Both the position numbers and the translations under genes were made by a program. From NCBI GenBank assembly GCA_024137785.1, contig JAHRHZ010000084.1:7155573-7219572 (forward strand): DNA of 64,000 nt, in the 5' to 3' direction. The DNA comes from Ginglymostoma cirratum (lineage: Eukaryota). Each line of letters starts with the position of its first letter. Within the stretch, counting starts at the first letter, position 1. The notes below the pieces were generated by a model. The model saw nothing but the letters and a program-made list of their open reading frames with translations, was not told where the DNA came from and did not search any database. Shown here in pieces: positions 2,108 to 58,525 of the stretch.

Positions 2108-2294
2108 TGGCAGTCCTGTTGAGTTTCTCCAGTAATTTCTATTGTTGTATCATGTGCTAAAATGCTCGGTTTACCTCTCAAGTGGTGACAAGAAAATGCT
2201 ACAAAGGAAACAACGTTAATACAAAAAACAAAATACTACTGTGACTGAAAGTGTGAAATGCTAACAGCAATTACTTGTAAGGTGTCTGAGCATC

Positions 2295-2880
2295 TCTGCA
2301 GAAAACTGTCATTCTGTCCTCAAAAATGGACTCGAGCTTCCAGGTGCCTGGCATTTCAATGCATCACCATGTTTCCTGGCCAGTATTTCTGTCCTGGGTC
2401 TGCTGCAGTGTGTCAGCAAGAATCAGAGCAGCTTGAAAGAAGAGCATCTCATTTTCTGCTTGGATACCTTGTAACCTTCAGGACTCATAATATCGAATTC
2501 AATAATTTTAGGCCCTCAACACTTTCTTCCATGTCCTTTAACCAACTTCACACCCCAGGTCCCGCTAATGACATGAACCACAAACAGCACAGTCAACCCA
2601 TTTTCAACCAGTTATGGTCTCCATTGCAAGCTTTTCTTTCTTTCTAGTATGTTGTCATCCATCCCTTTGTCTGTCCAAATGTTGTTCTCCCTCTGTCGGC
2701 TCCACCTCTGCATATCAGCTCCCTCCTTTCACCAACGCCACAGCCCCCACATTCAAACTATATCTTTGGCACATATACCACTTTTTGCTAGCTGGTATCA
2801 GTTCTAAAGAAGGGGCTTTGTTTCTGTCTCCACAGGAGCTGCCAAACCGGCTGAGTCTCTCTTGCAATTTCCGTTTCTGA
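2295..2880 (+). mobile_element. Penelope-like element 3' remnant, truncated at the copy A deletion junction
   Basis: Degenerate ...HFLLG...NIEFNNFR C-terminus; aligns to about 55455-56040. Confidence 0.65.
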
Positions 2881-3386
2881 TCCACGTGCTATATAATGTG
2901 CTTTATGTGACTGGATTGTGTTTGATAACGGTCCTCTGGAGTGCGTTGAACACTTCGTCAGGTTAAAGGAGTTGCACAAATGCAAGATGCGAGTATTAAT
3001 TGCCAAAAGTCACAGTAGAGGCTCTGCATTAAATCTGATGCAGGTAGGAATTTGAAGATTTGGCAGCCAGTGCTGACTTAACAAGGCAAGCTTAATAACA
3101 TAAGCTTTTCCTCTTAAGAAACAACCAGAGTGAAGATTCCCGAGTCTCTACACAACAGTTCCTTCTCTAACTTATATTAGTGATGTGTCATTTTATGCAT
3201 ATTATAAACATTGAAAGCATTAAATACAGTAAAGTAAATGGGATCAGCCCCTATTCACATTTATTTGACATGATCATCCTCCGATATTCTTTTGCAGCTT
3301 GTGCTCCTACACCTGATCCACAATTCTCTGTGTCTAAATCTCTCTGTGCTCTCCAGTTTCTTATTCAAATATTATTTATCCTGTAG

Positions 3387-3503
3387 ATAAAGATTATCTA
3401 TTAGTCTATAGATGGGCAGCTGGCATTCTGGCAATTTAATTATTGATAATCATTTCCTCGAGAAATGATCAAAAATCAAAACTCGAGATAAAGACATCAG
3501 GTG
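3387..3503 (+). pseudogene. Copy A transmembrane exon (DKDYLLVYRWAAGILAI*LLIIISSRNDQKSKLEIKTSG)
   Basis: Acceptor ATCCTGTAG, donor G|GTAAG, phase 1-1; homologous to 56307-56405 with 18 extra nt and one stop. Confidence 0.82.
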
Positions 3504-4568
3504 GTAAGAACTTCTGTTATTTCATTGAATATTTTTATTTCCAAGACCAAATCATCTTCTTCAAATACATACAGATCAGATGAATGATTAACTGTAGAGG
3601 AATAGGCAGCACTTTCCTACATCTTTAAAGAATGAAGTTCATGTCACAGACGCTTATGTGATAGGCAATTCAACATGACAATATAAACCGGATTTACTTC
3701 ACACCCTCATTCTACCCATTTATTCGATTTATACTCGACTTCCCAGATCTATAAATAGCAGTGCAAGTGTGTTCATTCCGAAGAGATGTCAGACGAGCCA
3801 ACTTATTTCACTTTACTCGCAGATCTCCAAACTAGTTTCACAATACAAACAAGACTGTCAATTCGCGGTCCCACAAGAGGAAAAATCTACGCATGTGTGA
3901 GTAGACGCAAGGCAGGATTTGAAAGATAATATAACTCTTAGTAATTCAGGTCTGTGGTATTGCTCGAGCACTCTGTTAATTATTACCACAAACATATACA
4001 TGAATTAAAAGCACAAGTAGACCATTCAACTCTTTCAGCTTTTCCGTATTTGAATAAGCTTATGGCTGAACTGATAGTGTTTAGAATTCCACATTCCCAA
4101 CTACAGAAGCTTTTCATTCCCCTTGTCTAACAGGAATTTAGGTACTTCTACAATTAAAACAGTCAATCACGATACCACCACCACCTACTGCAACAGAGAG
4201 TTCCAAACTGTCACAATCATCAGAGACAAAAAGAACCCTCTCACCTCTGTCCTTAAAGGACAATGTCTAATTGGTTGACTTTATCCCATGGTTCAGGATA
4301 CATTCACGAAGAAAGCATTTGTTCTATGTCCACCTTGTTAAAATGATTCAGGATCTCATGCACTGCAATCAAAACACCCCTCACTCTTGTAAATTCCAGT
4401 TGAAAGAAGCCTAGCCTAGTCAACTTATTTTCATAAAACAACCCATTCATTCCAGATGTCAATCGATTAAACCTCATTTGAATCAGCTCAAACGTTTTTA
4501 TATAGATTATGGTTACATTTGTGTTTTCGTAACTTACATTCAATGTAGGCTTATTTTCCTTGCTTCAG

Positions 4569-4612
4569 GTGTTAGGAGACATTCTATGGAAGTGAATAAT
4601 TCTTTACAGCCG
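4569..4612 (+). pseudogene. Copy A short cytoplasmic exon (GVRRHSMEVNNSLQP)
   Basis: Acceptor TTGCTTCAG, donor CCG|GTAAG; 44 nt, conserved with 57493-57536. Confidence 0.75.
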
Positions 4613-12612: not shown

Positions 12613-15160
12613 GCAGCGTTGACCAGCCACAGCTAAGTAAAGAAATTAAAAAGTCCTTATGAAATTCTTCTGCCTGCTATTTTCATTTAAGCATTAACAG
12701 ATATTTTTGTTGTTGTATGTAAATAACTTGGATATTGGAAGACAGAATCAAATGTTAGAATTTGATGATTAAGCCAAACTTCGAGTGGCCAACAGAAGAT
12801 GATAATAATGATTTCTAATAGGATGTAGGCATGTGAGTGGCGAGTGTAATTTAGAAAATTGGAGATGGTTACTTGTCGAAAATGGGTAAGGAGAAACAAC
12901 ATGCCCTTATTGGCACTTTTCTGAAGATTGCACAAGAACAGAGAGGCAAAGAAGTTGCTTATGAATTAACCTTTGAATTTGGCAGGACATAACCAGAATA
13001 TAGTTGAAATTCGTCAATGGAGGCACTGAGTACTAAAGTAGGGAAGTAATGTTGAACCTTTATATATCTGGTTAGGTCACCACCAGAACAGTGAACATAG
13101 TTCTGGTCATCAAAGTTTGGGAAAAGTGAGTCGTGGAAAGGATTCATGTGAGATATATTGGGAAGGTACTCGAAGTCGGAGATGGTAGATCTGAGATCCG
13201 GTTGGAAAAGCTTCGGTTGTTGGGGTGGACAAAGAAAATTGAGGGGATGACATAACAGAACTATACAAGATTATCAAAAGTTCAGATAAGGTAGACAAGG
13301 AAAACTGTCCCCATTCACTGACAACACAAAATCTAGAGAACATAGAGTTAAGGTTTTAGAAAAGAGATGCAGAGGAAATGCAAAGAAGCATTTTTAACGT
13401 GAGTGATATTGGCCTGGAAATGCATCCCATTAGGAATGGAAGCACAGACCATCAATGATTTCAAACAGAAAATCAATGGGCTCATGAACAAAGTAAACCT
13501 GCGGGCTACAGTTATCAAAAGACGGGGTGCGACTGAGTTGCCTAAAGAAAAGCCTTCAGACTTGATAGGCCATATGTTGTCTTTAGTGTTTCTAAATTGC
13601 TCTAATTTAAAGTTGTTTTCATTTATTCACTGACGGAAAACGGGTAGCACGGACTAGGCCAACAGTTCTTGTCTATCCTAATTGATCTTGAGAAGGTGAA
13701 GGTGAGTTGAATTCTTGAACTATTACAGTCCATCTGCGTTGGTCACCCACAAAACTATGAGGAAAATAGTTTGATTACTTTGACAAGCAAAAGCGAAACG
13801 ACAGTGGTAAAGTTCCTTGTCAGCATAGAAATGGTGACACTCCAAAGCATCTACAGCTCTTGCCCTCCTGGGTGGTAGACGTCATAAGTTTATGAAATAT
13901 TGGAAACTAATGGGAGGAAACTTCATGCCAGCTTTTATTTACAAGCTCAATTATCTCAAGCAGTGACTGACAAGTGATTAACAAGTCGTATTAAACATTA
14001 CTTTCACAGATTGAACAAAGAGGTGGAGATGACAAGCTGGCTTGTGCAACTTGAAGCTCGCTGATTCCAAAAAAAAGTCATCAAAACCGATATTGCAATA
14101 CAAATGTGCAGGATATGCACATATAAAGCTGATAAGAGAGATGCTGAAAACCAGAAAAGCAGTCTGACGTTGTGAATTATTTATAGATGGAAGCCGAGGA
14201 TATCCAATCATATACCATAAAATCGATGTCAATCACTGTTCCATAGCTCAATAGGGAATAATGATCTGGAACACCACAGGTAACTCATGTGCATGATGGG
14301 GGGAGAAGGTGAAACGTTTATTTTCAGCTTCAGTGTTGAGTATTATATCCAAACATAATGGGTTGCCAAATACAGGTCTTCAGTTTACTGTATAAGACTC
14401 TCCGTTCATCTGCTTATTCTCGACTGGTATCTTCTCTCTTACATGACTCACATGAATCACATTACAGCACATTTATCACAGTCTGTGGGAGAACTAGTCC
14501 AGAGCTTGTCATCAGAAGACGGCTTGGTTTTCAAGCAAAAATTCAAAAGTTGCTGCAGGCCCTATATACAACAAAGGAATGAAGAACAGCATCAGTGCAA
14601 GAGACAAGGCTGATGCATTTGTGTCCATTTTCAAATAGAGGAATGCAAAACACATTGCTATATCGTCCGCAGCATCTCAGATGCCAGTCATCAATGAACA
14701 TTATTCCATTCATGTGATATCAATAAACAAATGAAGACTCTGGTTTCTGCAAAGGGCATAGGCTCTGACAACAATGAGTAAGCTGAAGACTTCTAATCCA
14801 GACTAGATTTGTCCCAGCCAACCTTTTCTAACGCAGTTACACCGCTGGCATCTGACTGGCAATCTGTAAAATTGCCCAGATATGACCTCAAAAAGCAGAA
14901 CACATCCACTAATGCCAATTGCCACCATTTCAATCTACTCTGAAATATTGGAAAGTTTATGGAAGGGGCCAGAGTTATGAAAAGACACTTGCTCAGAAGT
15001 AATCTACCCACCGCGGCTCATTTTGGATTCTTCCCGAGACTTTCAAGTCCTAATCTCATTTCAGATTTTGTTCCAAAAAAAAAACCTGAACTCCAAAGGT
15101 ATGGTGAGAGTGAGTGCCCTGAACATCAAATAAACATTTGATTAAACACAAACGAGGTTT

Positions 15161-42219: not shown

Positions 42220-42274
42220 ATGTTGCTGAGGGCAGCAGTTCTGTTCATGGCTTTCCTGAGTTTGGCTTGGCCAG
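42220..42274 (+). CDS. Copy B exon 1: signal peptide MLLRAAVLFMAFLSLAWP
   Basis: ATG at 42220, hydrophobic leader, phase-1 donor CCAG|GTACTC. Confidence 0.88.
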
Positions 42275-42486
42275 GTACTCTTAAACGTTACAAACTGCCC
42301 TTTTACAATAACTAAGAATGTATTTCAAACTTATAGCTTCTACGTATTGCAAAATTAGATGCCTTGATTCTGCAACTCGATGCACGTCACTGTTCTCAAT
42401 TGTTCTTGTATTTTATTTCTCCGGTGTTTTTTCCATGTCTGCTATCTACAACTAGTATCATGTTCTTTACTTGTTTTTTTTTTCAG

Positions 42487-42795
42487 TTGTCACTAAAGTA
42501 ACATCGAACAAAGTAGCTCAGTTTCCCAAACTCTTGAAGGCGGCCAGAGGTGACAATGTTTCCATGTTCTGTACTTTTCCCATATTTGAAGATGTCCCTG
42601 AAGTATTTTGGTGGAGACACAACGAGGAATCGTTCCTGGAACCAGACAACAGAAAACGTTTTCGTGTCCAGAAAGGAAGGAGCTCACTTCATGTTCTCAA
42701 TGTCACTCTTCCAGACTCTGGAATGTATCATTGTAAAATAAAGCATCAGCAAACCATCCTTAGTTCTGAAAGTGGATCATTGCTGACAGTGTGCG
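42487..42795 (+). CDS. Copy B exon 2: V-set Ig domain with J-like G strand
   Basis: Polypyrimidine-CAG acceptor, G|GTAAGT donor, open frame; VAQFP, VSMFC, FWWR, LHVLNVTLPDSGMYHC, SGSLLTV. Confidence 0.95.
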
Positions 42796-43333
42796 GTAAG
42801 TGACACTGCACTGCACCAGATGCAGGCAACTTATGTAATCTGATCTTTTATAATTAGAAGAAAATCCAATGATAGTGTATTCACTTCACACTGTCGGGTA
42901 GATCTCGTCCCTGTTGACCTCGCAGTACAACAGCCATTGATTCCCTTTCGCTCGTTTGCGTCATTTCTTCAGGAAAAAAAATACACTGCTCATTGTGATC
43001 ATGATGTGGAGGTGCCGGTGTCGGACTAGGGTGGGAAAGGTCAGAAATCACACGACACCAGGTGATAATCTAAGACGTTTATTTGAAAACACGGCTTTTG
43101 GAGCCTCGGTCTGAAGGACTGGGTCTCCGAAAGCTTACGTCTTCAACTGAACCTGTTGGACTATAACCTGGTCTCGTGTGATTTCTGACATTGTCACGAT
43201 GACATAGTACTGCGCTGTTAATGTAACGAGTGCCTTTTTGGCGCCGGAACACCAATATCATTTTGGTGATATTGCACCAAAACAGTGAAAAAGGATAACT
43301 GTTGAAATCTTGGGATGAAGTTAATTCGTGGAA

Positions 43334-44893
43334 TCATTTTTACATGGTTATATAGAGTACCAAAGCAGAACCTACAATATGTAATAACAAGGTGTAGAGC
43401 TGGATGAACACAGCAGGCCAAGCAGCATTAGAGGATCAGGAAAGCTGACGTTTCGGGTCTAGACCCTTCTTCAAAAATCATTTCTCCGGCATCTGCAGTT
43501 CCTACTATCTCACCTAAAATATGCATTCGTTTTAAATTAAGGTGAATGATAATATACCACAGCCATCAATATTCAATAAACACAAGATATCTTTTCCACC
43601 TCCAAATTGCCGATCAAAACATTCTGTAACAAATCCTTTAAACTTTTAGATGGATATCAAGGAAAAGTAACACTGAGGAACAAGTTAAAATAAAGAACTG
43701 CAAATGCTGGAATTCTGAAACAAAGATGGAAATTGCTAGATAAACTCAGGGTGTCTAGCAGTATCTGTGCGAGCTGATGTTTAAAGTCCAGCGAAGTCAC
43801 TGGACTGGAAACGTTAACTCATTTTTCCCTGCACAGATAGCCTCAAAGTGAGAGGAAGCAGATTTAGGACTGAGTTGATGAAGAACCTCTTCACGCAAAG
43901 GATTGTGAATCTGTGGAATTCCCTGCCCAGTGAAGCAGTGGAGGCAACCAACCGCGATGGATGTTTTACAGCAAAGATGGGTAGATTTTTGATCAGTAAA
44001 GAAATTCAGGGTTATGACGAGCGGTTTGTTAAGTGGAGCTGAGTCCACTAAAGGATGAGCCATGATCTTATTGATTGCCAGAGCAGGCTCGGCGGATCAG
44101 ATGGCCGACTGTTGCAATTATTTCTTATCTTGGAATGCTGCCAGATCTACCCAGTTTCTCCCGCAATTTCTGTCTTTGTGTCGTGGGGTAAATGTTCGAT
44201 TACCTCTCACCAAAATAACGGTGCTAAAATGTGACAATAGATACGATGTTAATACAAATGCAACTTACTGAGGATATTTTGTAATTTAGAATGCTAACAG
44301 AAACTAATTGAAATGTGTCTGAGCATCGACGGAAGTAATACGCGCATAACAATTGGAAACAAGAGTGGCCATTCGTCCCGCCAGTTTACTCAGCTCCTCA
44401 GTAAAATTATGGTTGATCTGATTCTGGTCTCAACTGCACTTTCCTGTCCACCTTGATATCCTTGGACTTCCTCGTTAATCAAAAACGCAATTGACGTTTC
44501 AGGTCATAATCTTTCGTCAGAACATTTTTAATACCTCCTACATCAATTCATTTTTACATGGCTAAATAGAGAACGAAAGCAGAACCTGCAATATGTAATA
44601 ACAAGGTGTAGAGCTGGATGAACACAGCAGGCCATCAGCATTAGAGGAACAGGAAAGTTGACGTTTCAGGTCTGGACGCTTCTTCAAAAATCATTTCTCC
44701 GGCATTTGCAGTTCCTGCTATTTCACTTAAAATATGCATTCGTTTTAAATTAAGGTGAATGATAATATACCACGGCCATCAATATTCAATAAACACAAGA
44801 TGTCTTTTCCTCCAAATTGCCGATCAAAACATTCCGTATCAAATCCTTCAAACTTTGAGATGGATATCAAGGAAAATTAACACTGAGGATCAA
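43334..44893 (+). repeat. Local direct duplication of about 350 bp (43334-43683 and 44548-44893)
   Basis: Both copies run CATTTTTACATGG...CACTGAGGA and contain the same short PLE-type insert. Confidence 0.85.
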
Positions 44894-45921
44894 TGGAATA
44901 GAATAAAACCGGACAAACGGATTTGAGGTACAGTAAGTGAATGCCTGACTAACTTGAAGGATAGTATTTGCTTAGTGTTTTGGCTACGTATTTTCCCAAT
45001 TCTAACATGCTTGAAACGTCAATTGTTTCTTAAACAAACGAATCACAATCGCCAATGAGATGGCAAGTGTTGATGTTGCTCTCAGGTTTGGATTCCATCC
45101 CAAATCTTAAAACTTGCAGGGCTCCAACAATACCCGTAGGCTCTGTTTGACGCCATGCAGTTCGGCAACTGGATCGTCTCAGATGTAGGCAAAGCAGGCA
45201 AAGTGAATTAAGGATAGTGCCAAACATATCTAAAAACCTTTGTGTTCCTGCGTTTGTAATTTATTATCTCGATGCAATGGTACCTACAACAGAAGGCCAA
45301 GATGATATTTCTTTTCTTTCTCTCCACGAGTATTCCGTGATATCTGAAGCAGATCCATGGGGAACATAAAACGTTTCTCAGCGTTTGCTGGCAATAACAG
45401 TTAGCACACATTTGGAAGTGAATCAAATATCTAATTTTATCATTCCCTCGCATTAAAAATCCAGGAGCCATAAACGTGCAGAGACGTTAAGGCTATTGAT
45501 TGTAATAAACATGAGAACAATGCAAACCCACTAGTATTACCCCAGGTAAGCACTGGCTGCAGATTAAGAGGGCACGAGTTCACTTTAGTAACTGGTGAAT
45601 ATAATTCTACCTATGAATCTAATTTCTACAAGTAAGCTTCAGAGGTAGAATGGTAATACAGAGTACGTAATACCTGCACTTTATTACAGATTTTCTTCCC
45701 AGGTTCCTTCTTGTTGTGCATCATTTGCAAAATATCGCAACATTTTGCCATGCATTTCTTTTAAAATAAACGCAAAGACAACGTTTAAAATACGATAACA
45801 ATGAAAACTGTTGTCACTTTAGAAATGGAACAGCATCGATGCAGAAGGGCGCAGATTAGAAAGGGTGAAAGAAGAAAATGTAACTTAAACTTCTTAAAAA
45901 ATGTTTTACTTTCTGTTATAG

Positions 45922-46218
45922 TTCCTCCGACCCTCCTGAAAATCATTCCCGTAGAAGAGGTTTCAGGGAATTACTTGAAATTCAAGTGTAAAACGACTGC
46001 CTTTTATCCAGAGGATTTAGGAATCTCTTGGTTAAGAGATGGTGTCAAAATTCAGGCCAGAATAGAAACTGTGAAAAACAAGACCGTGGATGGTATTTAT
46101 GAAGTTACCAGTTCTTTGGAAGATGCACAGCCTTTGTGGAATGGCGTAGTATATACTTGCCTGGTATCTCATTCCTGTCTTAAGGTGCCCACAAGCGTCA
46201 GCTACACCTTCAATCGAG
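45922..46218 (+). CDS. Copy B exon 3: C1-set Ig domain
   Basis: Acceptor TTTCTGTTATAG, donor GAG|GTAAGA, 297 nt, phase 1-1; C1 hallmarks CKTTAFYPEDLGISW, DGIYEVTSSL, YTCLVSH. Confidence 0.95.
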
Positions 46219-49200
46219 GTAAGATTGAAAATTTTCCGAAGAGAGTTGGGAGGTGTAGTGGGAATAAGATCTTAATTGAGAATTTCAAGTCGTTGGGGAG
46301 CTGTTCTAACTCAAATATAACATGTGAATGCGACCGGTGTTCGTTCACAAAGCCACAGGGATGGAAACATTGTGAAATATTCTAAGTTGACTTGCAGGTG
46401 CAGGTTGGCGAATAGCTCCCTGCCATTACGGAAATGGAATGTTCACGTGACAAACTTCTAAGAAATTGAAAAATCGACTTTTTTTTGCTTAAATTAAGCG
46501 AATATGCCAATAAAATGGATTCTTTCCATGCAAGTAACTTCTACGAGCTCTACATGTGCATTGTTTATGCTGCCCAGTAGATCTCCACCAACAATGTCTG
46601 TACCCTACACTTGGAAAATTCTGTCCTCTCCACCTCCCACTGTGTATTTCCTTCTTTAAGACTCTTCTTGAACCTTATTTGTCTCTGTCCTAAAATCACG
46701 AAATCTCTGGATGATAATACTCTGTGAAGTGCCTGAGAATTATTTTAACCCGGTTAAAGGTGCAATATAATTGCAAGTTATTCTTGTTATACACACCAAA
46801 ATTTGCAGCAGATGCCGCTTGGGAAGGCCTGAGAAAGGTGTCATAACGTATACAAAGCCTTACAGGTCTTGGTCGGGCAAATGAGGGAAGGATGTTTCCG
46901 GCAGTGAAAGGTCTAGAACCAGAGAACACAGTTTCAGAATAATGGGCAGTTCGTTTTGGACTGGATGAACAAGAAGTTCTTCAACCACAGGGTGGTGAAA
47001 CGTTGGAATTCTCCACCCCAAAATGCTGAGAAAACTCAGTCACTCTGAGTATGGAATACTGTGATTGACAAAGTCCCAGAGGTTATGTAAATAGTGCAGA
47101 AAATCGCGCCAATGCAGATCAGCAATAATCTAGTTGATTGGCGAAGCATGGTCGAGGGCTCCAATGTCCCTACTCTAACTGATTATGTTGCTTTTCAACC
47201 CACGGTTAGGAAGCGACATCTGCGCCAGATCTTGTAACTGTTGTACATCAGTCTGGTTTAAGACAGTGAAGGAATGGGTGCTCATTCCTTTAATGTAGCA
47301 AACAACCCTCGGAAGCTGAGAAGAGTTTGCCGTGCCTTTAAATCATGAAATGCCATCTCTCCATAAAATGCATTGCAGGTACTCAGTTGATGTCCGCTGA
47401 TGCACATTAAGGCACGTGTACGGCTGTTCCCCACGAAACTGAAATGGGTAGAAATTGAAACGGTCTAACTTAGCTAACAGACGGGTTATCCTGGGCGACA
47501 CCTTTGCAAATTATCATCTTGTGCATGAAGCTCTGCGCATGTGACTCGCTGTGTTCCACACTTATAGATGTATATCAATCGTAGCAACATGTGCATAATA
47601 TGCATCTAAATACCAGGCTTCCAGGAAAGTTCCGTAAATGAACAGTAGGCTGGATTCAACTCCTATTCTCTGCCAGAGATATGTCATGACATCTGGAAGC
47701 AGGTTGATTAGAAAATAACGAAGGGAGAATTGATGAGTAAGCCGTCGAAGAGAAGTCTCTCCACTTGTCTGCTGGGATGGTTGTGAGGTTAGAGTGGGTT
47801 TTTATTCAATGTTTTATTCAATGTTACAGCGTTCCTTTACGGTTTGCAGCAGAACGTCGGCTGGAAATATGTCTTGAAGGCACTTCGTTGGGACTGGACC
47901 ACATGTACTCCGAACTCATAAAAAGAGTGCTACCGCTGAACCAATGCTGACATATATGCGTTGTTGTCATTATTTAAATCTATGTTACATGAAGTTTGAG
48001 TCTAAAACTTTCCAAGACAGCCAGCATTCTTATGTGAAACATTAACACTAAAGACTGCAGTTATGGTGCCACTCTTTCACTCCCCGTTCTGAGTAGCATC
48101 GATCAAGAGTCAGAATTCATGCTGCAACGTCCCTGGCAATGGAAGCGTGTTTTGGCAATGTAACATGTGTAACCGTTTCCAATAACTTCAGGATCAGATG
48201 TTAAAATTTCGCTTAAGAGAGTAAATATATATTGTAACGCAATTTTACTTCTATTGTAATTACAACCACTAGTTGAGGGACAATGCTAAAATATTGCTGC
48301 TCCTCACTAGTGTAGCGCACTGGAAACCAATTATTCTCACAGTCCTCACAAAAGAAAAAAAAGTTTTATAAAAGGACTCAAAACCTTCTTCATTCAACTG
48401 CCGTTTTGAGGTGGGCTGATAGAAAGCTCTGGTTGGGTTTCTGTGCTGAAAAAAGATTATTTATTATGAAGTGTTTCAAGCTACAGGCAGACAATTGTGA
48501 ACTGTTCACATATGACTACTAGTTAAAACCGTAACCCTCTTTTAAAATTGCTCTGACACACCATTCAGAGAACCACTAGAAAGTACGCGTAGACAGGTCG
48601 ATGGAAAGACTGGTAAAACAGTTCATTGGCTCCTGTCCACCTGGTTGCTGAAATGATCATTTTGGCTTATCGGGGTTTGGTGATCTGCCATGTTCTTTCC
48701 TCAAGTACTTTCAGATTTTTTTTTCACAAGGCACACGCCGACTGATAATTCATAAAGTCTCTGACTGATTGGATTGTCACGAGAGCTTGCAACAACTAAT
48801 AAGGGAAAGCACGTGGCTTTATTCAGTTTTCAACTGTTTTTCTAAGGGCGAATGTAAGGGCAGCTCCTTCAAATCGGAGGTCCAATGGTTTCTCATCAAA
48901 CGTTCACTCCCATAAGCTGTTTGGCCACTTGGGAGACTATCCAATAGGCAGACGATATTGTCATCGACAAATGCTCACCATTCCAGACCCTCTTCAGCAA
49001 CTTGCTATCAGTCGACTGCCATTTATACTCTCGTTGTCTGCAGCTGAACTTCCTCACTGCAGACATCATGACACCCAAAGATATGCACTAATGCTTGACG
49101 TGAGGGAAGCAGTCAGTTTTAGCACTGCGTCCCAATGATTCAGCAATCAAGGATTAGCAGCAGCAAACTAAACTGGCTTTTCTTTTTGTTTCATTTAATA

Positions 49201-49289
49201 CTTGCTGCGTGGTATACAAAGTCACAAGATTACAAAATTACGTCAAACGTCACTTGATAGTTTTCATATTAATTGTGATATTGTTAAAA

Positions 49290-49625
49290 AATAGGCGATA
49301 GCCTAGTGCTCTTGTCACTGGATTTTTAATCCAGAGAACCAGATAATGTTCTGGGGACCCGTGTGCAATTTGAATTCAATGAAAAAAAACGTCTGTAATA
49401 AAGAATCTAATGATGATCATGAATGTATTGCCCTGTTGGAAAAACCCGTCTTGTTCATTAATGTCCATTAGGCGTGGAAACCACCATCTTTACCTGGTCC
49501 GGCTTACATGTGACCCCAGGCCCACAGCAATATGGTGGACACTGAACTGCCCTCTGGGCAATTGGGGATGGTCGATTAATACTGCCTAGCCAGTGATGCC
49601 CTCATCCCGTCCATGAATTTTTTTT
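49290..49625 (+). mobile_element. tRNA-derived SINE (resembles SacSINE1/DeuSINE type)
   Basis: Head ...GTCACTGGA...AATCCAGAG and tail GATGCCCTCATCCC...ATGAAT. Family name is from recall. Confidence 0.5.
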
Positions 49626-52374
49626 TTAATGGTATTTGCTCGTGCTCACTCGAAATTGTTGGCATCATAGAAAAGCCACAGAAGTAGCTTTTGGTTAAAC
49701 GTTGAAACAATTAATTCTTTTTATCTTTGCCAGTATGTTCCTTGAATTATGAATTAAGTAGTTTATCTCACTAAAAATCCAAAATTTCAAGTGCATTATA
49801 TTGAGCTTGGTTACATACAGAAACTCAGCTACACAATTTGGGAACAGAGTAGCATGATCCAGCCAGAGCTCCTCTGCTCCACTCGGTATTTTTCTTCTTT
49901 TTCCTTATATTTCTCCTCCTCTTAATCTCTTTTCTCAACCTCGCACTCCCAGCCCAGCTTCCAAAGTGAGGTTGGTGGTCAGCAGAGATGATAACCGCCA
50001 GAGCAAGAATGCCAGCGACCAGTGATCAGAGTGGGGACACAGGCCAAAGTAGGGACACGGGTGTCCCGTGACTGGAGTGTGAACACCAGCAGCTAGAGAG
50101 GCAATGCTGTCGAGCAGCAGACAATGTGGACACACTGTCATCTAGTGACACGAGTGGGAACGCCAGCAAGCACTGGCGTGAATCAAGGAAGCCAGTAATC
50201 TGTTGTCAGAGTAGATGGTACACACTACTGCCATGTGAATGTGTGGTGGAGGTGATGAAAATTTGAGAAGGTGAATTGGTTTAAAATCATGTGGGCTTCT
50301 TTTCCTCAGGTGACATCCAGCTTCTTGATTGTTGTTAAAAATATATTAATTTAAGGAAGTGGTGAATATCCCATCAAATTCCACAAATCTGCTTTGCTGG
50401 TAATGGATAGATTTTCAGGAATTAAGAGGATGTAGAATTCCTGGACTCTGCCTTAGTCAAGTATATGTCTGGTCCAATTCAGCTTCTGGCCAGTGGGCGT
50501 TATGGGTGATAGTTAGATTCTCTCTTGTTGGAAATGTTCATTGCCTGGTATTGATGAGGTGTGAATGTTACTTGTCACTTTTCAGATCAATATGGGATTG
50601 TGGTTTGGTTTTACTGCACTTAATCAAGAACTATTTCATTTTCTGAGGAGCTGCAAATAGTATTCCAGATTGTATGATCATCCGTGAACATGCACACTGT
50701 TGACTTTGTGCTGGTGTTAAGTTCAGGAAGAAGCAGGCAAGATAGATGGGACTGATACATGGTAACATCCAGTACTGTAATAATTGACATGCAAATAAAA
50801 AAACACAAATCTCCCAATCTGCTCGATATAACTCCCACCAGTGGTAAGTTCTAACAACGTCCATCACCACCAGCCCTCCACCTCCACATCCCACCATATT
50901 CCCATTGACTGCAGTTTCTTCAGGGCTCCCTAACAACACAGTCGGTCAAATCCTTAGTCCTAATGGCAGACGCATTCACATCACATCTGGAGATCAACTC
51001 TTCACTGGATGCTTGAACCTATAACACGATTCAGCCAGAAGGTCCTTCAGTCACTTCGTCAAAATCGTTGAATTCCCCCCTTAACACTATTGTGGGACAA
51101 CCTATATCACTGCATATGGACTGCAATGGTTCAACAAGACAGCTTTCCATCACATTTCTAAAGGAATCTAGTGATGGACAATAAACACTGGTCCGTTAAG
51201 GATGCCCATGTCCCACAGGTGAACACAATAAGACCTAGTGGAACTCAAATCAAGCCGCAGTGAGCTAGTTATTGTTGTGCAAGTTTTGGCTGATGGAGCT
51301 GTCCCTGACAATTTCCATCTGCTTGCAGAAACCAAACAATAGGGTATTGGGACCTTAATTGCCCATGTTTCCTTTGAGTGTTTTTTTGTGGCTAAGGCAT
51401 ACATAGATCACTTTTCATTGTTGTTGGACGCCAGTATTCTAACTTAAAAGAAAAGGCTTGTCTAGGTTGCCTGCATGGTTCAGGGAGACAAGTCTGCAGT
51501 GTTACTGCACAGATATCATCAGGACAAAACCCTTTTCATTAGCAATCACAGTGCACACATGAAACAACTGATATACTCACAGTCTGTTGATATGAAGCGC
51601 CCTCCCTGCTCCGGGAATGGATATCATGGGCTCCTTATGAGTTTTGAAGAAAAAATCTTTGTGTGAATAACAAATTCGTATATAATGGAGAAGGCTAGCA
51701 AATGATTGGGATTCATTGAGGAGATATAATTGAGGTGGACAATCTTGATTACCGAACTTCTGCCACGAAGTAGCTCCTTCAGATCATGTTGCACCCAAGT
51801 GGAATAGCATCTAATTTATTACACTATCACATATTTCACAAGAAGAGTGAACTTGTATGCACGGTTGTCACAAATTCACAGTTGGGAGCATGTTTTCACA
51901 CTATAAAATCCAGTATTGTGCTGCTAACTAATTCACATGTCATGTCTTCAGCATTTATAGTTCCTAAAATGACGCAATAATCACTCACTTCTTGGGGGCA
52001 GAACTGTGAAGTGGAGCTGAAAGTATTACTCACATTTTACTGGGTTGTAGGGAGTGTAGGCTGGAGAGCATGGTGGTCTGTTGATGTAGTTCAGGAGACA
52101 TTTTTGCAGCCAGAACACAGGTGGTCGGCAAAGCAACCAGTCGGCCTATGTTTTGTCTACCGAGTATAGAGGGGACAATATTATGAACAATGAATACAGT
52201 TGGGCACCGGGGAATCCTTGGTTGAGAAAAAGTTGGACATTTCTGACACCCCACCCCCACAACACCCCACCTACAGAAGGTGATATAATCAGAACAGAGG
52301 TGATATAGGTGGAAAAAGTGGGAGAATAGAATCGAGTTTCCTGCAGGAATTGTGGTGTGATGATTTATAGACCA

Positions 52375-54513
52375 AGTAGGGATGGCAGTGGAACAACAAT
52401 GGCAGGTATTTCTGGATATAATGCAGAAGGTGCAGTAATCAGTTCACGCCAAAGAGGCAGAAAGATACTAAGGGGAGGCAGGGGCGGCCGTGGCTAACGA
52501 GGGAATTTAAGCATTGTATAAAGATAAAGGGGAAGTATAACATAGCAAAGATGAGCGGGAAGCCGGAGGTCTGGGAAACTTTTGAAGAGCAACAGAAGAT
52601 AACTAAAAAGGCAATATGCAAAGAAAAAATGAGGTACCAAGGCAAACTAGCCAAAAATATAAAGGAGGATAGTAAAATCTTTTTTAGGTATGTGAAAAGA
52701 AATAAAATGGTTAAGACTAAAATTAGGCCCTTGAAGACAGAAATGGGTGAATTTATTATGGGGAACAAGGAAATGGCTGAAGAGTTGAATAGGTACTTTG
52801 GATCTGTCTTCACTAAGGAAGACACAAACAATCTCCCAGATGTAATAGTGGCTGAAGGACCTAGGGTAATGGATGAACTGAAGGGAATTTATATTAGGCA
52901 GGAAATGGTGTTGAACAGACTGTTAGGTCTGAAGGCTGATAAGTCCCCAGGACCTGATGGTCTGCATCCCAGGGTACTTAAGGAGGTGACTCTAGAAATC
53001 GTGGACGCATTGGTAATTATTTTCCAATGTTCTATAGATTCAGCATCAGTTCCTGCGGATTGGAGGGTGGCTAATGTTGTCCCACTTTTCAAGAAAGTAG
53101 GGAGAGAGAAAACAAGGAACTATAGACTGGTTAGCCTGACGTCAGTGGTGGGAAAGATGCTGGAGTCAATTATAAAAGAAGAAATTTCCACTCATTTGGA
53201 TAGCAGTAGTAGGATAGGTCAGAGTCAGCATGGATTTACAAAGGGGAAATCGTGCTTGACTAATCTTCTGGAATTTTTTGAGGATGTAACTATGAAGATG
53301 GACAAGGGAGAGCCAGTGGATGTAGTGTACCTGGACTTTCAGAAAGCCTTTGATAAAGTCCCACATAGGAGATTAGTGAGCGAAATTAGGGCACATGGTA
53401 TTGGGGGCAAAATACTGACTTGGATTGAAAATTGGCTGGCTGACAGGAAGCAAAGAGTTGTGATAAATGGGTCCCTTTCGGAATGGCAGGCGGTGACCAG
53501 TGGGGTACCGCAAGGATCGGTGCTGGGACCGCAGCTGTTTACAATATACATTAATGATATAGATGAAGGCATTAAAAGTAATATTGCCAAATTTGCTGAT
53601 GACACAAATCTGGGTGGCAGTGTAATATGTGAGGAGGATGTTATGAGAATACAGGGTGACTTGGACAGGCTAGGTGAGTGGGCAGATGCATGGCAGATGC
53701 AGTTTAACGTGGACAAATGTGAGGTTATCCACTTTGGTGGCAAGAACAGGAAGGGAGATGACTACCTAAATGGATTCAAGTTAGGTAAAGGGGAAGTACA
53801 ACAAGATCTAGGTGTTCTTGTACATCAGTCTATGAAAGCAAGCATGCGGGCACAGCAGGCAGTGAAGAAAGCTAATGGCATGCTGGCCTTCATAACAAGA
53901 GGAATTGAGAATAGGAGCAAAGAAGTCCTTCCGCATCTGTACAGGGCCCTGGTGAGACCGCACCTGGAGTATTGTGTGCAGTTTTGGTCTCCAAATTTGA
54001 GGAAGGACATTCTTGCTATTGAGGGAGTGCAGCGTAGGTTCACGAGGTTAATTCCCGGAATGGTGGGACTATCATATGTTGAAAGATTGGAGCGACTGGG
54101 CTTGTATACACTTGAGTTTAGAAGTATGAGAAGGGATCTGATTGAGACATATAAGATTATTAAGGGATTGGACACTGTGGAGGCAGGGAGCATGTTTCCG
54201 CTGATGGTTGAGTCCAGAACCGGAGGACACAGTTTAAAAGTAAGGGGTAGGCCATTTAGAACAGAGTTGAGGAAAAACTTCTTCACCCAGAGAGTGGTGG
54301 AGAGATGGAATGCTCTGCCCAAGAAGGCAGTGGAGGACAAGTCTCTGGATACTTTCAAGAAAGAGATGGATAGAGCTCTTATAGATAATGGAATCAAGGG
54401 TTATGGGGATAAGGCAGAAACAGGATACTGATTGTGGATGATCAGCCATGATCATAATGAATGGTGGTGCTGGCTCGAAGGGCCGAATGGCCTACTCCTG
54501 CACCTATTGTCTA
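52375..54513 (+). mobile_element. Young 5'-truncated CR1 LINE with an uninterrupted 626-aa RT ORF (52551-54431)
   Basis: KSPGPDG, SQHGF, LDFQKAFDKVPH, VPQGSVLGP, KFADD; no endonuclease domain; 3'UTR ends CCTATTGTCTA. Confidence 0.95.
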
Positions 54514-55250
54514 CAAGTAATTGTGGGAGTCGGTGGACTTGTAAAGAATATCATTGTTTAGCGTATGCCCAGAAATAGAAACAGACATGTCAAGAAAGGG
54601 AAGGCAGGAGTCAGAGATGGAGTAGGGAAAGATGACAGCATGATGGAAATTGAAAGTGAAATTGATCTTTTTTTTTCCAATTTTGGATGCAGCACCAATG
54701 AAGGCATTGATGAAACAGAGAAAAGATTGTTGGCACAAACCTGATTGGGATCGGTGCAAGGAATTTTCCAAGTACCCTAGCCTGGTATAACAAAACACCA
54801 TGCAGGTATACTTGGACAAATGTATGATCTGAACAATGTGAGAGGTTTTAAAGGAGAAGTTGTTCAAACTGAGGGTCAGTTTGGCCAGGCAAAGAAGGGT
54901 GGTGGTGCAGGGGAACAGTTCTGGCTTTTTTTTTTTCTCGAGAAAGAAGTGGAGAATCCAAAAATGATCCAAATGGGGGATGAACAGGTAAAGGGATTTC
55001 ATGTCCATGGTGAATATTAGGCGTTTGCTGCCATAAAGTGGAAATTCTGAAACTGATGTAAAGTGTCGCATGACTCATGGATGTAAGTTGGAAGGGACCC
55101 GAGAAGTGGAGAAAACATTGAGTCAAGGTAGGAAGAGATGAGGTCTGTTTGGCAGGATCAGTCAGAAACAATGGGTAAGCCTTGGTAGTACTTTTGATGG
55201 CTTTAGGGAAGAAGGTAGAAGAAATGTCCAAAGGTTGGTAGACTGTGAGT
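54514..55250 (-). mobile_element. Penelope-like RT remnant
   Basis: IFTMDMKSLYLFIPH, LSLNNFSF, LPFLD and YKSTDSHNYL in ORF 54511-55071. Confidence 0.8.
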
Positions 55251-55269
55251 TAGATGGCTGTGGGGCAGT

Positions 55270-56040
55270 GGTGTTGGTTACCATATCCCCAGCCCATTGA
55301 CTTCCTCCCTCTTCACTATTCAAGCCTCCAGACATTCCTTCAAAATAGATCAGTGATGTACTTATGCTTCACTCATTCCACTATACTCTCTTCACTGTTC
55401 ACAATGTGGGTTCCTGTACAATGGGGAGTCAAAACATAGAATGGGCAAACTGCTTTGCATAAAACCCTAATTGTGTCCTCAAAAATGGCGTTGAGCTTCC
55501 AATTGCCTGCCACTAAAATGCACCACCATGTTCCCTGGCCAGAATTTCTGTCTTGGGCCCGTTGCAGTGTTTCTGCGGGCCTCAGTGCAAGACAGAAGAT
55601 GAGCATCTCATTTTCTGCTTGGGAATCTTGTAGCCGTCAGGCCTCATAATATAGTGTTCAATAATTTTAGACCATGAACACCTTCTTCCATGTCATTTTC
55701 CCACCCTCACACCCCAGGTCCTACTGATGACGTGAGCCACTAATAGCACAGTCAATCCACTTCCATCGAGTTATGATCTCTGTTGTCAGCTTTTCTTTCT
55801 TCTTGGCATGTTGTCATCCATTTCTTCATATGTCTAAATGTTGTTCTCGCTCTGACGGCTCGATCCCTGCATATCCATTCACACCTTTCACCACCCGACA
55901 CCCCATACCTTCAATCTCTGTCTTGGACATATATACCACTTTTTCCGAGCTGCTATCGGTTCTAAAGAAGGCTCTCGGCTTCTGTCTCCACGCTGCTGCC
56001 AGACTGACTGAGTTTCTCTTGCAATTTCTTTTTCTGATCC
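55270..56040 (+). mobile_element. Penelope-like GIY-YIG and 3' remnant
   Basis: Degenerate similarity to 5170-5900; its 3' portion is paralogous to 2295-2880. Confidence 0.7.
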
Positions 56041-56306
56041 ATGTGTTCTTATGTGCTTTATGTGGCTGGATTGTGTTTGATAATGGTCCTCGGGAGCGCA
56101 TTGAACACTTTGTCATATCCATTGTAATTCTCATAAGCATATGATACATTAAAATAAAAGGGATCAGTCCCTATTCACATTTGTTTGACATGATCATCGT
56201 CATTTACTCTTTGGCAGCTCGTCCTCCTGCGCCTGATCCATGATTCTTTGTGTCTAAATATCGCTGTGTTCTGCAGTTTCTTATTGAAATGTTATTGTTC
56301 TTGTAG

Positions 56307-56405
56307 GTAAAGAATATCTACTGATCTGTAGATGGGCAGGTGGCATGCTGGTAATTTTACTATTGATAATCATTTTGACAAGACTCGAGTTAAAGACATC
56401 TGCTG
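56307..56405 (+). CDS. Copy B exon 4: transmembrane exon (GKEYLLICRWAGGMLVILLLIIILTRLELKTSA)
   Basis: Acceptor TTGTTCTTGTAG, donor CTG|GTAAG, 99 nt, phase 1-1, hydrophobic stretch, conserved in copy A. Confidence 0.85.
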
Positions 56406-57492
56406 GTAAGAACTACGGTTATTTCATTGAATATTTTTAATTGCCCATGAACAACCAATTATCCTTCTTTAAAGACATACAGAGCATAAGAATTGTGATG
56501 AACAGTCGAGGATTAGTCAGCACTTGCCTACATCTTTAAAAAATGAAATTGGCATCACAGACCGTTATGTGAAAGGCAATTTAACATGACAATATAAACC
56601 AGATTTACTTTACCACCTCGTTCTAACAATTTATTCGATTTATACACGAAGTACCAGATCTAAAAATAGCAGTGCAAGTGTGTTCATTCCTAACGAATAT
56701 CAAGGGGGTTAACCTGTTTATCTTTACCCTCAGAACTCCCAACCAATTTCACAATACAAACAAGACTGTAAATTCGTCGTCCCACAAGAGGAAAAGTCTT
56801 CAGGTGTGATTAGCACCAAGGCAGGATGGGTAAAATTAATAAACTCCATTCTGAGCTGTAACACTTCGTATTTCAATTCACTCGTCTTGCTTGTGCACTC
56901 AATTCATTATTGCCACAAACATTTATATGAGTTAAAAGCACAAGGAGTCCATTCAACTCCTCCAGATTTTCCATCATTTAATAAGCCTATGGCTGACCTG
57001 ACAGTGTTTGGAATTCCACATTCCCAACTCACCATAAAAACTTTTTATTTCCCCTGTCTAACGGGAATCTAGATACTTGTACTTTTAAAATATTCAATAA
57101 TGCTACCACCACCATCTTGTGGATCACAGATTTCCAATCTGTCACAATCATCTGAGTCAATAAAAAAAACCTCCGCAACTCTGTCCATAAATGTTAACCT
57201 CTAAATGGTACACTGTATCCCTTGGTTTGGGATGCATTCATGAAAGAAAGCATTCATTCTACGTCCATCAGGTCAAAATGGTTCAGGATCTCATACACTG
57301 CAATCTAGATACCCCACACTCTTATAAACTCCAGTAGAAAGAATCCTAGACTATTCAACTTATCTTCATAAGACTACCCGCTCATTCCAGGTGTCAATCA
57401 AATAAAACCTCCTCTCAATCAGGTCAAACATTTTTAAATTGTCATATCTGCGTTTTTATAACATACATTCAATGTAAGTTTATTTCTTTCAG

Positions 57493-57536
57493 GTGTTAGG
57501 AGACATTCTGTGGAAGTGGATGAATCTCAGCAGCCG
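57493..57536 (+). CDS. Copy B exon 5: cytoplasmic exon (GVRRHSVEVDESQQP); gene continues downstream
   Basis: Acceptor TTTCTTTCAG, donor CCG|GTAAGT; length and splice sites conserved in copy A. Confidence 0.78.
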
Positions 57537-57979
57537 GTAAGTTGACCATATTTCTTCACATGAAGATCAGTTAGGATGGAATAGCAAGAAATACTGCAAT
57601 CATCTAAGAGGATTAATTAAATCATAGACTAAGGGAGGCTATTAAGGCTGTATAGGTTTTTGAAAACAGTTATTCAATCAGACCAGTTCTTCATTCTTTG
57701 TCCACATTCCTATATTTCGGCGTTTTTAAGGAAATGTCTCCTTCCTAATTGAAATTTCCATTAACTCTGCTTCTTCCATAGATTCAGGAAGTGAATATTA
57801 AAGTACTGCAGACGTTCCAACAAAAGCTTTCCTTATCTTCCCATGATTTTCTATATAGAATTTTAAATGTGTCCTCTAGATACTGGCAGATAAACAATTG
57901 AAAACATACTTAATAAAAAGAACCAAAAGAACCGTTGATTCTGTAAATCAGAAAAAAAAAGACAGATATTTCAGTATCC

Positions 57980-58520: not shown

Positions 58521-58525
58521 AGGTC

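What the first reader, a model, noticed from the sequence alone, without database searches (positions are those of the whole stretch)
42220..57536. Intact non-rearranging antigen-receptor-like gene: leader-VJ-C1-TM-cytoplasmic
Seen: five phase-compatible GT-AG exons (55, 309, 297, 99, 44 nt) join into one open frame. The V exon already contains its G strand (SESGSLLTV, a degenerate GxGTxLTV J motif), no heptamer/nonamer RSS lies beside it, and a true C1 domain follows. Known: C1 domains are largely limited to Ig/TCR/MHC/beta2m, tapasin, SIRP and some B7-family members. Germline-joined VJ(-C1) genes such as NKp30 and PRARP-type genes are discussed as relatives of the pre-RAG antigen-receptor ancestor. 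Inference: this is a TCR-chain-shaped innate receptor of a shark family that I cannot match to a named gene.
Basis: partly seen in the sequence, partly recalled or inferred. Interest (0 to 1): 0.85.

Follow-up and report, generated by a model that had tools for sequence, protein, structure and literature searches.

The report
Shark SIRP-like V-C1 receptor gene
This is a real, apparently intact shark gene for a membrane receptor built like one pre-joined antibody or T-cell-receptor chain. It is not an orphan: it belongs to a large, uncharacterised family found in all cartilaginous fishes, whose closest named relatives are the SIRP receptors, and its 3' end lies outside the window.

Summary
The five exons are real: 55, 309, 297, 99 and 44 nt, all GT-AG, phases 1-1-1-1-0, no internal stop. 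Exon 2 is a short V domain that carries its own G strand and has no RSS beside it. Exon 3 is a true C1-set domain. Exon 4 is a transmembrane segment confirmed by homology.

The gene belongs to a tandemly expanded family found from chimaeras to sharks and rays. NCBI names its members inconsistently: SIRP-alpha-like, SIRP-beta-like, B7H6-like, TAPBPR-like, Ig-lambda-like. Many members carry a four-tyrosine tail like that of SIRP-alpha. The ectodomain scores higher against Ig lambda chains than against SIRP-alpha.

"Intact" is not proven:
- Exon 5 ends at a strong donor.
- The frame closes only by read-through (…QQPVS*), as in the catshark model P0167.
- Otherwise it needs a terminal tyrosine-motif exon, expected about 1 kb past the window end. 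This follows from the decayed copy of that exon behind the upstream pseudogene paralogue.
- No RNA evidence was obtainable.
- This copy has lost one near-invariant Gly of the J-like GxG motif.
- The transmembrane Arg is not conserved and does not prove an activating role.

The scan had already flagged this family elsewhere in this genome.

The parts
42220..42274 (+). Leader exon, 55 nt: MLLRAAVLFMAFLSLAWP plus 1 nt. It is a split leader, so the signal peptide ends in the V exon, as in antigen-receptor genes.
   Evidence: ATG and gt donor read directly. Paralogue A has the same exon at 739-793. Family leaders align with it.
42487..42795 (+). V exon, 309 nt. A short V domain with its G strand included (…SSESGSLLTVC); the J-like motif is degenerate (ExGSxLxV).
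   Evidence: Pfam V-set 5e-10, I-set 2e-8. AlphaFold pLDDT 91. Foldseek top matches are shark VNAR and TCR V-alpha. VIA Z 13-15 to NCAM Ig1, VNAR, TCR V and CD79b. Best homologue is 68% identical.
45922..46218 (+). C1-set constant-domain exon, 297 nt. It opens with the family hinge PPTLLKI.
   Evidence: Pfam C1-set 1.2e-9. Model pLDDT 85. Foldseek matches MHC class II beta-2 and Ig CL at TM 0.82-0.87, rmsd 1.7-2.0. Up to 66% identical to family members.
56307..56405 (+). Connecting-peptide and transmembrane exon, 99 nt: G-KEYLLICRWAGGMLVILLLIIILTRLELKTSA. It has an Arg and a Cys at the outer edge of the membrane span.
   Evidence: tblastn to P0164 1.8e-8 and to P0038 4e-8, 71% identity. Family TM HMM 1e-9.
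57493..57545 (+). Cytoplasmic exon: 44 nt up to the donor at 57536 (G-VRRHSVEVDESQQP). If the donor is not used, the frame runs on as VS and stops at TGA 57543-57545.
   Evidence: It matches the family exon G[VN][KR]RNSVEAxQxEEP in P0201, P0200 and P0167. Catshark model P0167 ends …REEPVG* at the same place. ATTAAA lies at 57616.
739..4612 (+). Context: upstream paralogue A, a pseudogene from the same duplication (1-7814 matches 41447-61571). Its V exon has two stops, its C1 exon is deleted and its TM exon is truncated. Its exon-5 copy lies at 4571-4612.
   Evidence: blastn collinearity at 70-82% identity. tblastn V match at 1015-1317, 73% identical with two stops. It is sister to the gene in the V tree, support 99.
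14010..14170 (+). Context: decayed terminal tyrosine-motif exon of paralogue A (IEQRGGDDKLACA / LKLADSKKKSSKPILQYKCAGYAHIKLIRE). The Tyr of LTYAAL is now Cys and there is a frameshift. It predicts where the gene's own terminal exon should lie, about 1 kb past the window end.
   Evidence: Tail HMM best hits in the window, E 0.09 and 1.5. Collinearity 12611-12992 with 63459-63973.

Best explanation
Window 42220-57545 (+) holds at least the first five exons of a germline-joined V(J)-C1 type I membrane receptor gene. It is one copy of a tandemly duplicated multigene family restricted, as far as the searches reached, to cartilaginous fishes.

Shown:
- The exon structure.
- A short V domain that carries its own G strand.
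- A genuine C1 domain.
- A homologous transmembrane exon.
- A homologous first cytoplasmic exon.

Family traits, shown in homologues:
- An invariant GxG in the G strand.
- The hinge VPPTPLKI.
- Three kinds of membrane or tail region: (i) long tails with two to four tyrosine motifs (xAYAxLNL, TVYAQT, LTYAALQL, xVYAEV); (ii) short tails, some with an Arg at the outer edge of the membrane span; (iii) spans ending in IIVDH with short tails.

Inferred: the family works as paired innate immune receptors in the manner of SIRPs. Long-tailed members would recruit SH2-domain phosphatases and inhibit. Short-tailed members would signal through an adaptor or act as decoys.

For this copy the tail is unresolved. 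One option is that the message ends by read-through of the exon-5 donor (…RRHSVEVDESQQPVS*, no tyrosine). The other is that the donor splices to a terminal tyrosine-motif exon expected about 1 kb beyond the window.
For: - Exons and phases.
- Domain identities.
- Family: one search lists 17 short proteins that match the V exon in one or two stretches at 32-64% identity. All 16 of them with a species on record are chondrichthyan. The species are Heterodontus, Scyliorhinus, Heptranchias, Mustelus, Hemiscyllium, Chiloscyllium, Carcharodon, Pristis, Mobula, Narcine, Hypanus and Callorhinchus.
- The TM exon and exon 5 are homologous to the family.
- The V and C1 trees place the gene in an elasmobranch clade with catshark P0167/P0168 and horn-shark P0151/P0164.
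- Tail types.
- SIRP link: public names are PTPNS1-like and SIRP-beta-1-like. The nearest language-model clusters of the full-length inhibitory homologue are SIRP-alpha clusters, score 0.96. The family profile aligns SIRP-alpha d1-d2 at 53 bits and d3 at 43 bits, including the shared VPPT-LE hinge.
- 3' end: P0167 ends at the same read-through. Paralogue A's decayed terminal exon and the collinearity that runs to 63973 are.
Against: - No transcript evidence. No listed run is on record as RNA, and the two good holders are DNA of a relative.
- The ectodomain is not specifically SIRP-like. The family profile scores Ig lambda chains at 87 bits against 53 bits for SIRP-alpha d1-d2. With the ectodomain alone, the language-model neighbours are unnamed V/C1 clusters, CD200-like, CD200R-like and TAPBPR-like, not SIRP.
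- There is one C1 domain, not two.
- Position 94 is Glu in this copy, where 90% or more of the family have the first Gly of GxG.
- Its C1 branch is three times the median length.
- The Arg at the membrane edge is Gly/Cys in most members, and it also occurs in Mobula P0160, which has a tyrosine-motif tail.
Confidence: 0.8

Rival explanations
1. The family is a relic of the pre-RAG antigen-receptor lineage, of the PRARP or UrIg type. On this reading it is closer to IgL/TCR chains than to SIRPs, and the SIRP-like tail is a shared or convergent signalling module.
For: - The family profile scores Ig lambda V-J-C at 87 bits, against 53 for SIRP-alpha d1-d2 and 48 for UrIg2 V-C1.
- The V model's best Foldseek hits are shark VNAR and TCR V-alpha.
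- The gene has a split leader, one-exon VJ, an invariant GxG in the family and a single C1, which is the two-domain form postulated as ancestral (PMC12227049 Fig. 2 legend; PMC2785349).
- The only non-chondrichthyan hit is a coelacanth V-J-C1 fragment, P0202, at 3e-10.
- The ectodomain alone is not SIRP-like by language-model features.
Against: - No tree with outgroups could be built, because the tools returned no SIRP, PRARP, IgL or TCR sequence as a usable record.
- PDB holds thousands of light chains, so the best light-chain score is inflated by choice.
- The tail motifs and their order resemble SIRP-alpha. That comparison is from memory of the human sequence, so it is a lead only.
- This reading and the SIRP reading are not exclusive, because SIRPs are themselves held to be antigen-receptor relatives.
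Confidence: 0.3
2. This copy is an activating receptor. The Arg in its membrane span pairs with an ITAM adaptor of the FcR-gamma, CD3-zeta or DAP12 type, and its tail is short.
For: - The Arg lies five residues into the hydrophobic span (LLICRWAGG…), and the tail encoded in the window has no tyrosine.
- Catshark P0167 has Arg in the same column (IIGRVGG) and a short tail ending at the same read-through. Its near-twin P0200 has Cys there and a long tyrosine tail.
- Paired inhibitory neighbours are reported by earlier notes.
Against: - The Arg is not conserved in the family.
- Mobula P0160 has Glu-Arg there together with a long tyrosine-motif tail.
- Paralogue A shares the Arg-Trp yet kept a remnant of the terminal tyrosine exon.
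- The exon-5 donor CCG|gtaagt is a strong site, which suggests it is used.
- No adaptor was tested.
Confidence: 0.35
3. The copy is silent or on its way to becoming a pseudogene, despite its open exons.
For: - The neighbouring paralogue from the same duplication is a pseudogene.
- The first Gly of the otherwise near-invariant GxG is lost.
- The C1 end branch is long, 0.36 against a median of 0.12.
- A 10-kb intron carries a LINE with an intact RT ORF.
- There is no RNA evidence.
Against: - About 800 nt of coding sequence in five exons is open, with consensus splice sites and long pyrimidine tracts.
- All fold-defining Cys and Trp residues and YxCxVxH are kept.
- Both domains fold with high confidence.
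- A relative's DNA contigs cover the V exon at about 97% identity, against about 94% in the introns.
Confidence: 0.2
4. It is the shark orthologue of B7H6 (NCR3LG1) or of TAPBPR, as some automatic names say.
For: NCBI names several family members NCR3LG1-like or tapasin-related protein-like.
Against: - The same family also carries SIRP-alpha-like, Ig-lambda-like, TCR-beta-like and HLA-DO-beta-like names, so the names only reflect weak best hits.
- The leader is followed directly by the V exon, and the whole product is about 270 aa. There is no room for the large N-terminal tapasin domain.
- Pfam prefers C1-set (1.2e-9) to CD80-like C2-set_2 (0.012).
- Neither B7H6 nor TAPBPR is among the 60 best PDB matches of the family profile.
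Confidence: 0.03

Closest known systems
SIRP family (SIRP-alpha/PTPNS1, SIRP-beta, SIRP-gamma)
   Same: - A non-rearranging V domain with a J-like G strand, followed by C1-set domain(s), a membrane span, and paired long-tail and short-tail members in gene clusters.
- Family tails with four tyrosine motifs in an order like SIRP-alpha's.
- The hinge VPPT-LE is shared with SIRP-alpha d3.
- Public annotation and language-model features point to SIRP for long-tailed members.
   Different: - One C1 domain instead of two.
- A short V with 54 residues between its Cys and no C'' strand.
- The ectodomain scores lower against SIRP-alpha (53 bits) than against Ig lambda (87 bits).
- Arg, not Lys, at the edge rather than the middle of the span.
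- CD47 binding and synteny are unknown.
PRARP genes (Fu et al. 2019, J Immunol 202:1992; cited in PMC10751288)
   Same: By that paper's description as I recall it: non-rearranging VJ in one exon, a V-C1 ectodomain in bony fish to reptiles, a membrane span and a cytoplasmic ITIM. This is the same two-domain layout as the shark family.
   Different: No PRARP sequence or text was available through the tools, so relatedness is untested. As far as I recall, PRARP was not reported from cartilaginous fishes and is a small family, not a large tandem one.
UrIg / UrIg2 (Flajnik et al. 2023, 2025; PDB 9dmx)
   Same: Elasmobranch, non-rearranging, with a split leader, one-exon VJ and C1-type domains. UrIg2 is the best single PDB hit of the C1 exon (3e-18, summed over three domains).
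   Different: UrIg and UrIg2 have three or more C domains; nurse shark UrIg2 has nine. They have no tyrosine-motif tail and are single genes in the MHC or the antigen-receptor complex. The profile score over V-C1 is only 48 bits.
Ig light chains and TCR chains
   Same: The V-J-C1 order, the split leader, phase-1 exons and the GxG[ST]xLxV core in the family. They give the highest two-domain profile score (lambda, 87 bits) and VNAR and TCR V-alpha are the top structural neighbours.
   Different: No RSS and no separate J segment. The V is truncated. The signalling tails are of ITIM type. The gene sits in a tandem family with pseudogenes.

Membership tests
SIRP family | N-terminal V-set domain with a J-like G strand encoded in the V exon, no rearrangement | tested here: met
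   The V exon contains the G strand. The family consensus is GxG[ST]xLxV with both Gly invariant in 24 members. This copy reads ExGSxLxV. There is no RSS beside the V exon.
SIRP family | Two membrane-proximal C1-set domains (three Ig domains in all) | tested here: not met
   The gene has a single C1 exon. tblastn with the C1 exon finds no second copy between V and TM. Family proteins are V-C1-TM.
SIRP family | Either a four-tyrosine ITIM tail (alpha type), or a short tail with a basic residue in the membrane span (beta type) | tested here: inconclusive
   The tail inside the window has no tyrosine and the span has an Arg at its outer edge. However, exon 5 ends at a donor, and a terminal tyrosine exon is expected beyond the window.
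SIRP family | Sequence closer to SIRPs than to other C1-bearing families | tested here: inconclusive
   The family profile scores SIRP-alpha d1-d2 at 53 bits and Ig lambda at 87 bits. Language-model neighbours are SIRP-alpha for the full-length homologue but not for the ectodomain alone. No outgroup tree was possible.
SIRP family | CD47 binding; location in the SIRP gene cluster region | not testable with these tools
   No binding assay is available.
PRARP | One-exon VJ, one C1, a membrane span and a cytoplasmic ITIM | tested here: inconclusive
   The layout is met by long-tailed family members. For this copy the ITIM part is not inside the window.
PRARP | Sequence relatedness to chicken, fish or reptile PRARP | not testable with these tools
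   The paper is not held and no PRARP sequence was returned by any search.
UrIg / UrIg2 | VJ followed by three or more C1-type domains | tested here: not met
   There is one C1 exon only. UrIg2 has 9-11 C domains.
Rearranging Ig/TCR genes | V segment ending in an RSS, with separate J (and D) segments | tested here: not met
   The G strand is in the V exon, which ends at a splice donor. No heptamer-spacer-nonamer lies beside it.
Tapasin / TAPBPR | Large N-terminal tapasin domain ahead of the IgC1 domain | tested here: not met
   The leader exon is followed 212 nt later by the V exon and then by C1. Catshark homologue P0167, which has the same layout, is 271 aa.
B7H6 / B7 family | B7-type IgV-IgC ligand that binds NKp30 | not tested
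   Only automatic names point this way. No B7H6 sequence was available. B7H6 is not among the 60 best PDB matches.

The most novel reading that the evidence does not exclude
The family is the surviving two-domain VJ-C1 form of the ancestor shared by SIRPs and the rearranging antigen receptors. It would sit nearer to IgL/TCR than SIRPs do, and still be expanding as a paired inhibitory/activating receptor family at the base of the jawed vertebrates. This copy would be an Arg-bearing, adaptor-coupled activating member.
Probability: 0.15. Interest if true: 0.8.

Novelty: new variant of a known kind. Interest (0 to 1): 0.55.

Why it matters
C1-set domains are almost confined to the adaptive immune system. 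Non-rearranging V(J)-C1 genes such as SIRP, PRARP and UrIg are the main candidates for relatives of the gene that the RAG transposon invaded.

This family is large and spans all cartilaginous fishes. It has exactly the two-domain V-C1 layout, SIRP-alpha-like tails and short-tailed partners. It would therefore:
- push SIRP-like paired receptors back to the oldest living jawed vertebrates;
- offer a testable outgroup for antigen-receptor V and C1 trees.

For annotation, it shows that the present public names for these genes (SIRP-alpha-like, B7H6-like, TAPBPR-like, Ig-lambda-like, TCR-beta-like) are inconsistent. The single gene in this window adds little beyond one more member.

Tried and rejected
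- **RNA evidence.** The look-up of sequencing runs found no run on record as RNA. Read laying showed that X2 and X3 are DNA contigs of a relative that run through the introns. One 193-nt contig of X1 (guessed RNA, another organism) begins 3 nt before the V-exon acceptor with 29 unplaced letters. That is suggestive only.
- **Named outgroups for trees.** Two profile searches returned only chondrichthyan proteins, one coelacanth fragment and four chance-level hits. V and C1 trees against SIRP, IgL, TCR, PRARP, B7H6 and tapasin therefore could not be built.
- **Homodimer of the catshark ectodomain** (complex prediction): no verdict. This is not evidence either way.
- **UrIg/UrIg2 identity:** rejected on domain number.
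- **CD28-family reading:** rejected. Those genes are V-only.
- **Possible alternative terminal exon at 60124-60175.** It has an AG acceptor and reads GRSGINISAHDSNYAV*, resembling the GKxRLxISA… ends of P0166, P0168 and P0169. A small HMM of that exon did not pick it up, so I dropped it.
- **Tyrosine-motif exons inside 57537-64000:** none found.
- **The bacterial promoter/terminator scan** was irrelevant.
- **Joined model.** Phases and split codons were checked on the DNA.
- **N run 15161-15560:** left untouched.

Full report
**Observation**

- The leader (42220-42274) starts at an ATG and ends CAG|gtactc.
- The V exon (42487-42795) follows a run of T and cag, and ends GCG|gtaagt.
- The C1 exon (45922-46218), the TM exon (56307-56405) and a 44-nt cytoplasmic exon (57493-57536) all have AG acceptors behind pyrimidine tracts and gtaag donors.

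The split codons read V, V, G, G. The phases are 1-1-1-1, then 0. No exon has an in-frame stop.

**What the exons encode**

- *V exon, sequence.* It scores V-set 5e-10 and I-set 2e-8 in Pfam.
- *V exon, structure.* Its AlphaFold model (pLDDT 91) has nine strands, and the last one (residues 97-101) is SLLTV, so the G strand lies inside the V exon. Only 54 residues separate the two Cys, and no C'' strand is modelled. The structural neighbours are tied: shark VNAR, TCR V-alpha and V-delta, CD79b, NCAM Ig1 and titin I-set (Foldseek; VIA Z 13-15). It is therefore a short V/I-type domain with a J-like end, not a full TCR-type V.
- *C1 exon.* It is a genuine C1-set domain: Pfam 1.2e-9 against 0.012 for CD80-like C2-set, and its model superposes on MHC class II beta-2 and Ig CL at TM 0.82-0.87, rmsd 1.7-2.0 Å.
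- *RSS.* A scan found nothing beside the V exon. The one weak heptamer-23-nonamer match lies on the other strand, in the intron after C1.

**The gene is one of a family**

An exhaustive HMMER search with the V exon listed 17 short proteins that match it in one or two stretches at 32-64% identity, set apart from giant multi-Ig proteins. All 16 of these with a species on record are chondrichthyan. The species are Heterodontus, Scyliorhinus, Heptranchias, Mustelus, Hemiscyllium, Chiloscyllium, Carcharodon, Pristis, Mobula, Narcine, Hypanus and the chimaera Callorhinchus.

Their automatic names disagree: SIRP-alpha (PTPNS1)-like, SIRP-beta-1-like, NCR3LG1 (B7H6)-like, tapasin-related-like, Ig lambda-like, TCR-beta-like and HLA-DO-beta-like. 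This shows that none is a clear orthologue of a named gene.

The family alignment has these conserved features:
- invariant Cys, Trp and DxGxYxC;
- an invariant GxG in G[ST]G[ST]xLxV;
- the hinge VPPTPLKI;
- C1 hallmarks CKTAAFYPE and YTCLVSH.

The window's V and C1 exons are 60-68% identical to catshark and horn-shark members. In both trees they fall in an elasmobranch clade. Earlier notes of this scan list many more copies in this genome, and one follow-up reached the same SIRP-like reading.

**Membrane and tail**

The TM exon is homologous to the family (P0164 1.8e-8; HMM 1e-9). Exon 5 (G-VRRHSVEVDESQQP) is the family's G[VN][KR]RNSVEAxQxEEP exon.

In long-tailed members that exon is spliced to exons carrying xAYAxLNL, TVYAQT, LTYAALQL and xVYAEV. 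As far as I recall the human sequence, this order and spacing mirror SIRP-alpha's four tyrosines. That recollection is a lead, not a test.

In catshark P0167, which has Arg in the same TM column (IIGRVGG), the model ends …REEPVG* by reading through the same donor. In the window the read-through gives …QQPVS*, with TGA at 57543-57545 and ATTAAA at 57616.

The Arg (LLICRWAGG) is not conserved. It also occurs in Mobula P0160, which has a long tyrosine tail. It therefore does not by itself show an activating receptor.

**The 3' end is outside the window**

The window holds a segmental duplication: 1-7814 corresponds to 41447-61571. The upstream copy is a pseudogene:
- its V exon has two stops;
- the C1 exon is lost in an 11-kb deletion;
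- its TM exon is truncated.

A tail HMM finds its best hits in the whole window at 13995-14164, 9.4 kb behind that copy's exon 5. This is a decayed terminal exon, with Tyr changed to Cys in LTYAAL and a frameshift. Collinearity between the two copies continues to 12992 and 63973. The equivalent exon of the gene under study should therefore lie about 1 kb beyond the window end.

No tyrosine-motif exon is present in 57537-64000. 'Intact' therefore cannot be asserted from this window.

**Relation to known families**

The family profile against PDB scores as follows.

| PDB target | Score |
|---|---|
| Ig lambda chains, V-J-C | 87 bits |
| SIRP-alpha d1-d2 | 53 bits |
| SIRP-alpha d3 (shared VPPT-LE hinge) | 43 bits |
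| UrIg2 V-C1 | 48 bits |

- Language-model neighbours of the full-length inhibitory homologue are SIRP-alpha clusters (0.96).
- With the ectodomain alone they are unnamed V/C1 clusters, CD200-like and TAPBPR-like.
- So the tail looks SIRP-like, while the ectodomain is a generic antigen-receptor-type V(J)-C1.
- UrIg and UrIg2 are excluded by domain number.
- TAPBPR is excluded because there is no N-terminal domain.
- PRARP (Fu et al. 2019, cited in PMC10751288) has the same layout by description, but it could not be tested.
- I found no paper on this shark family in the held library. Much of the relevant literature is not held.

**Weaknesses**

- No RNA evidence could be obtained.
- This copy has Glu at the first Gly of GxG.
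- Its C1 branch is long.
- Its neighbour is a pseudogene.
- No outgroup tree or synteny could be done.
- The homodimer job gave no verdict.

**Verdict**

The gene is real, and over five exons it is apparently intact. It is a non-rearranging V(J)-C1-TM gene, one member of an uncharacterised, SIRP-like paired-receptor family of cartilaginous fishes. Its tail, and hence whether it inhibits or activates, remains open.

Noticed in passing
window 739-4612 and 14010-14170: The upstream paralogue from the same segmental duplication is a pseudogene. Its V exon has two stops. The C1 exon is missing because about 11 kb (equivalent to 44327-55453) is absent. The TM exon is truncated. The terminal tyrosine-motif exon is decayed (Tyr to Cys, frameshift).
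   Followed up: yes
window 52551-54431 (+); also 9686-10609 (-) and 20544-21041 (-): There is a 626-aa open reverse-transcriptase ORF (RVT_1, 2e-33) of a LINE-like element inside the 10-kb C1-TM intron, on the gene's strand. Two further RT fragments lie elsewhere in the window.
   Followed up: partly
window 43000-44700 (e.g. 43384-43478, 44598-44690; also 6537-6630): Short interspersed repeats sit in the V-C1 intron. Summed contig depth in a relative's DNA runs reaches millions there, so the repeat family is very abundant.
   Followed up: no
window 46336-46374 (-): This is the only RSS-like match in the gene region: CACAATG, 23-nt spacer, ACGAACACC (1 + 2 mismatches). It lies on the opposite strand in the intron after the C1 exon, next to no V or J segment, and is most likely chance.
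   Followed up: partly
window 60124-60175 (+): After an AG, this stretch reads GRSGINISAHDSNYAV*. It faintly recalls the alternative terminal exon GKxRLxISA… of short family isoforms (P0166, P0168, P0169). A small HMM did not support it.
   Followed up: partly
homologues P0030, P0168, P0169, P0123, P0125, P0178 (no locus held): A third kind of family member has a membrane span with a basic residue near its start, an acidic IIVDH/IIVEH/IIMDH end and a short tail. The layout suggests pairing with another membrane protein.
   Followed up: no
window 45922-46218: In the family C1 tree the end branch of this copy is 0.36 against a median of 0.12. Either no close orthologue was sampled, or constraint on this copy is relaxed.
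   Followed up: partly
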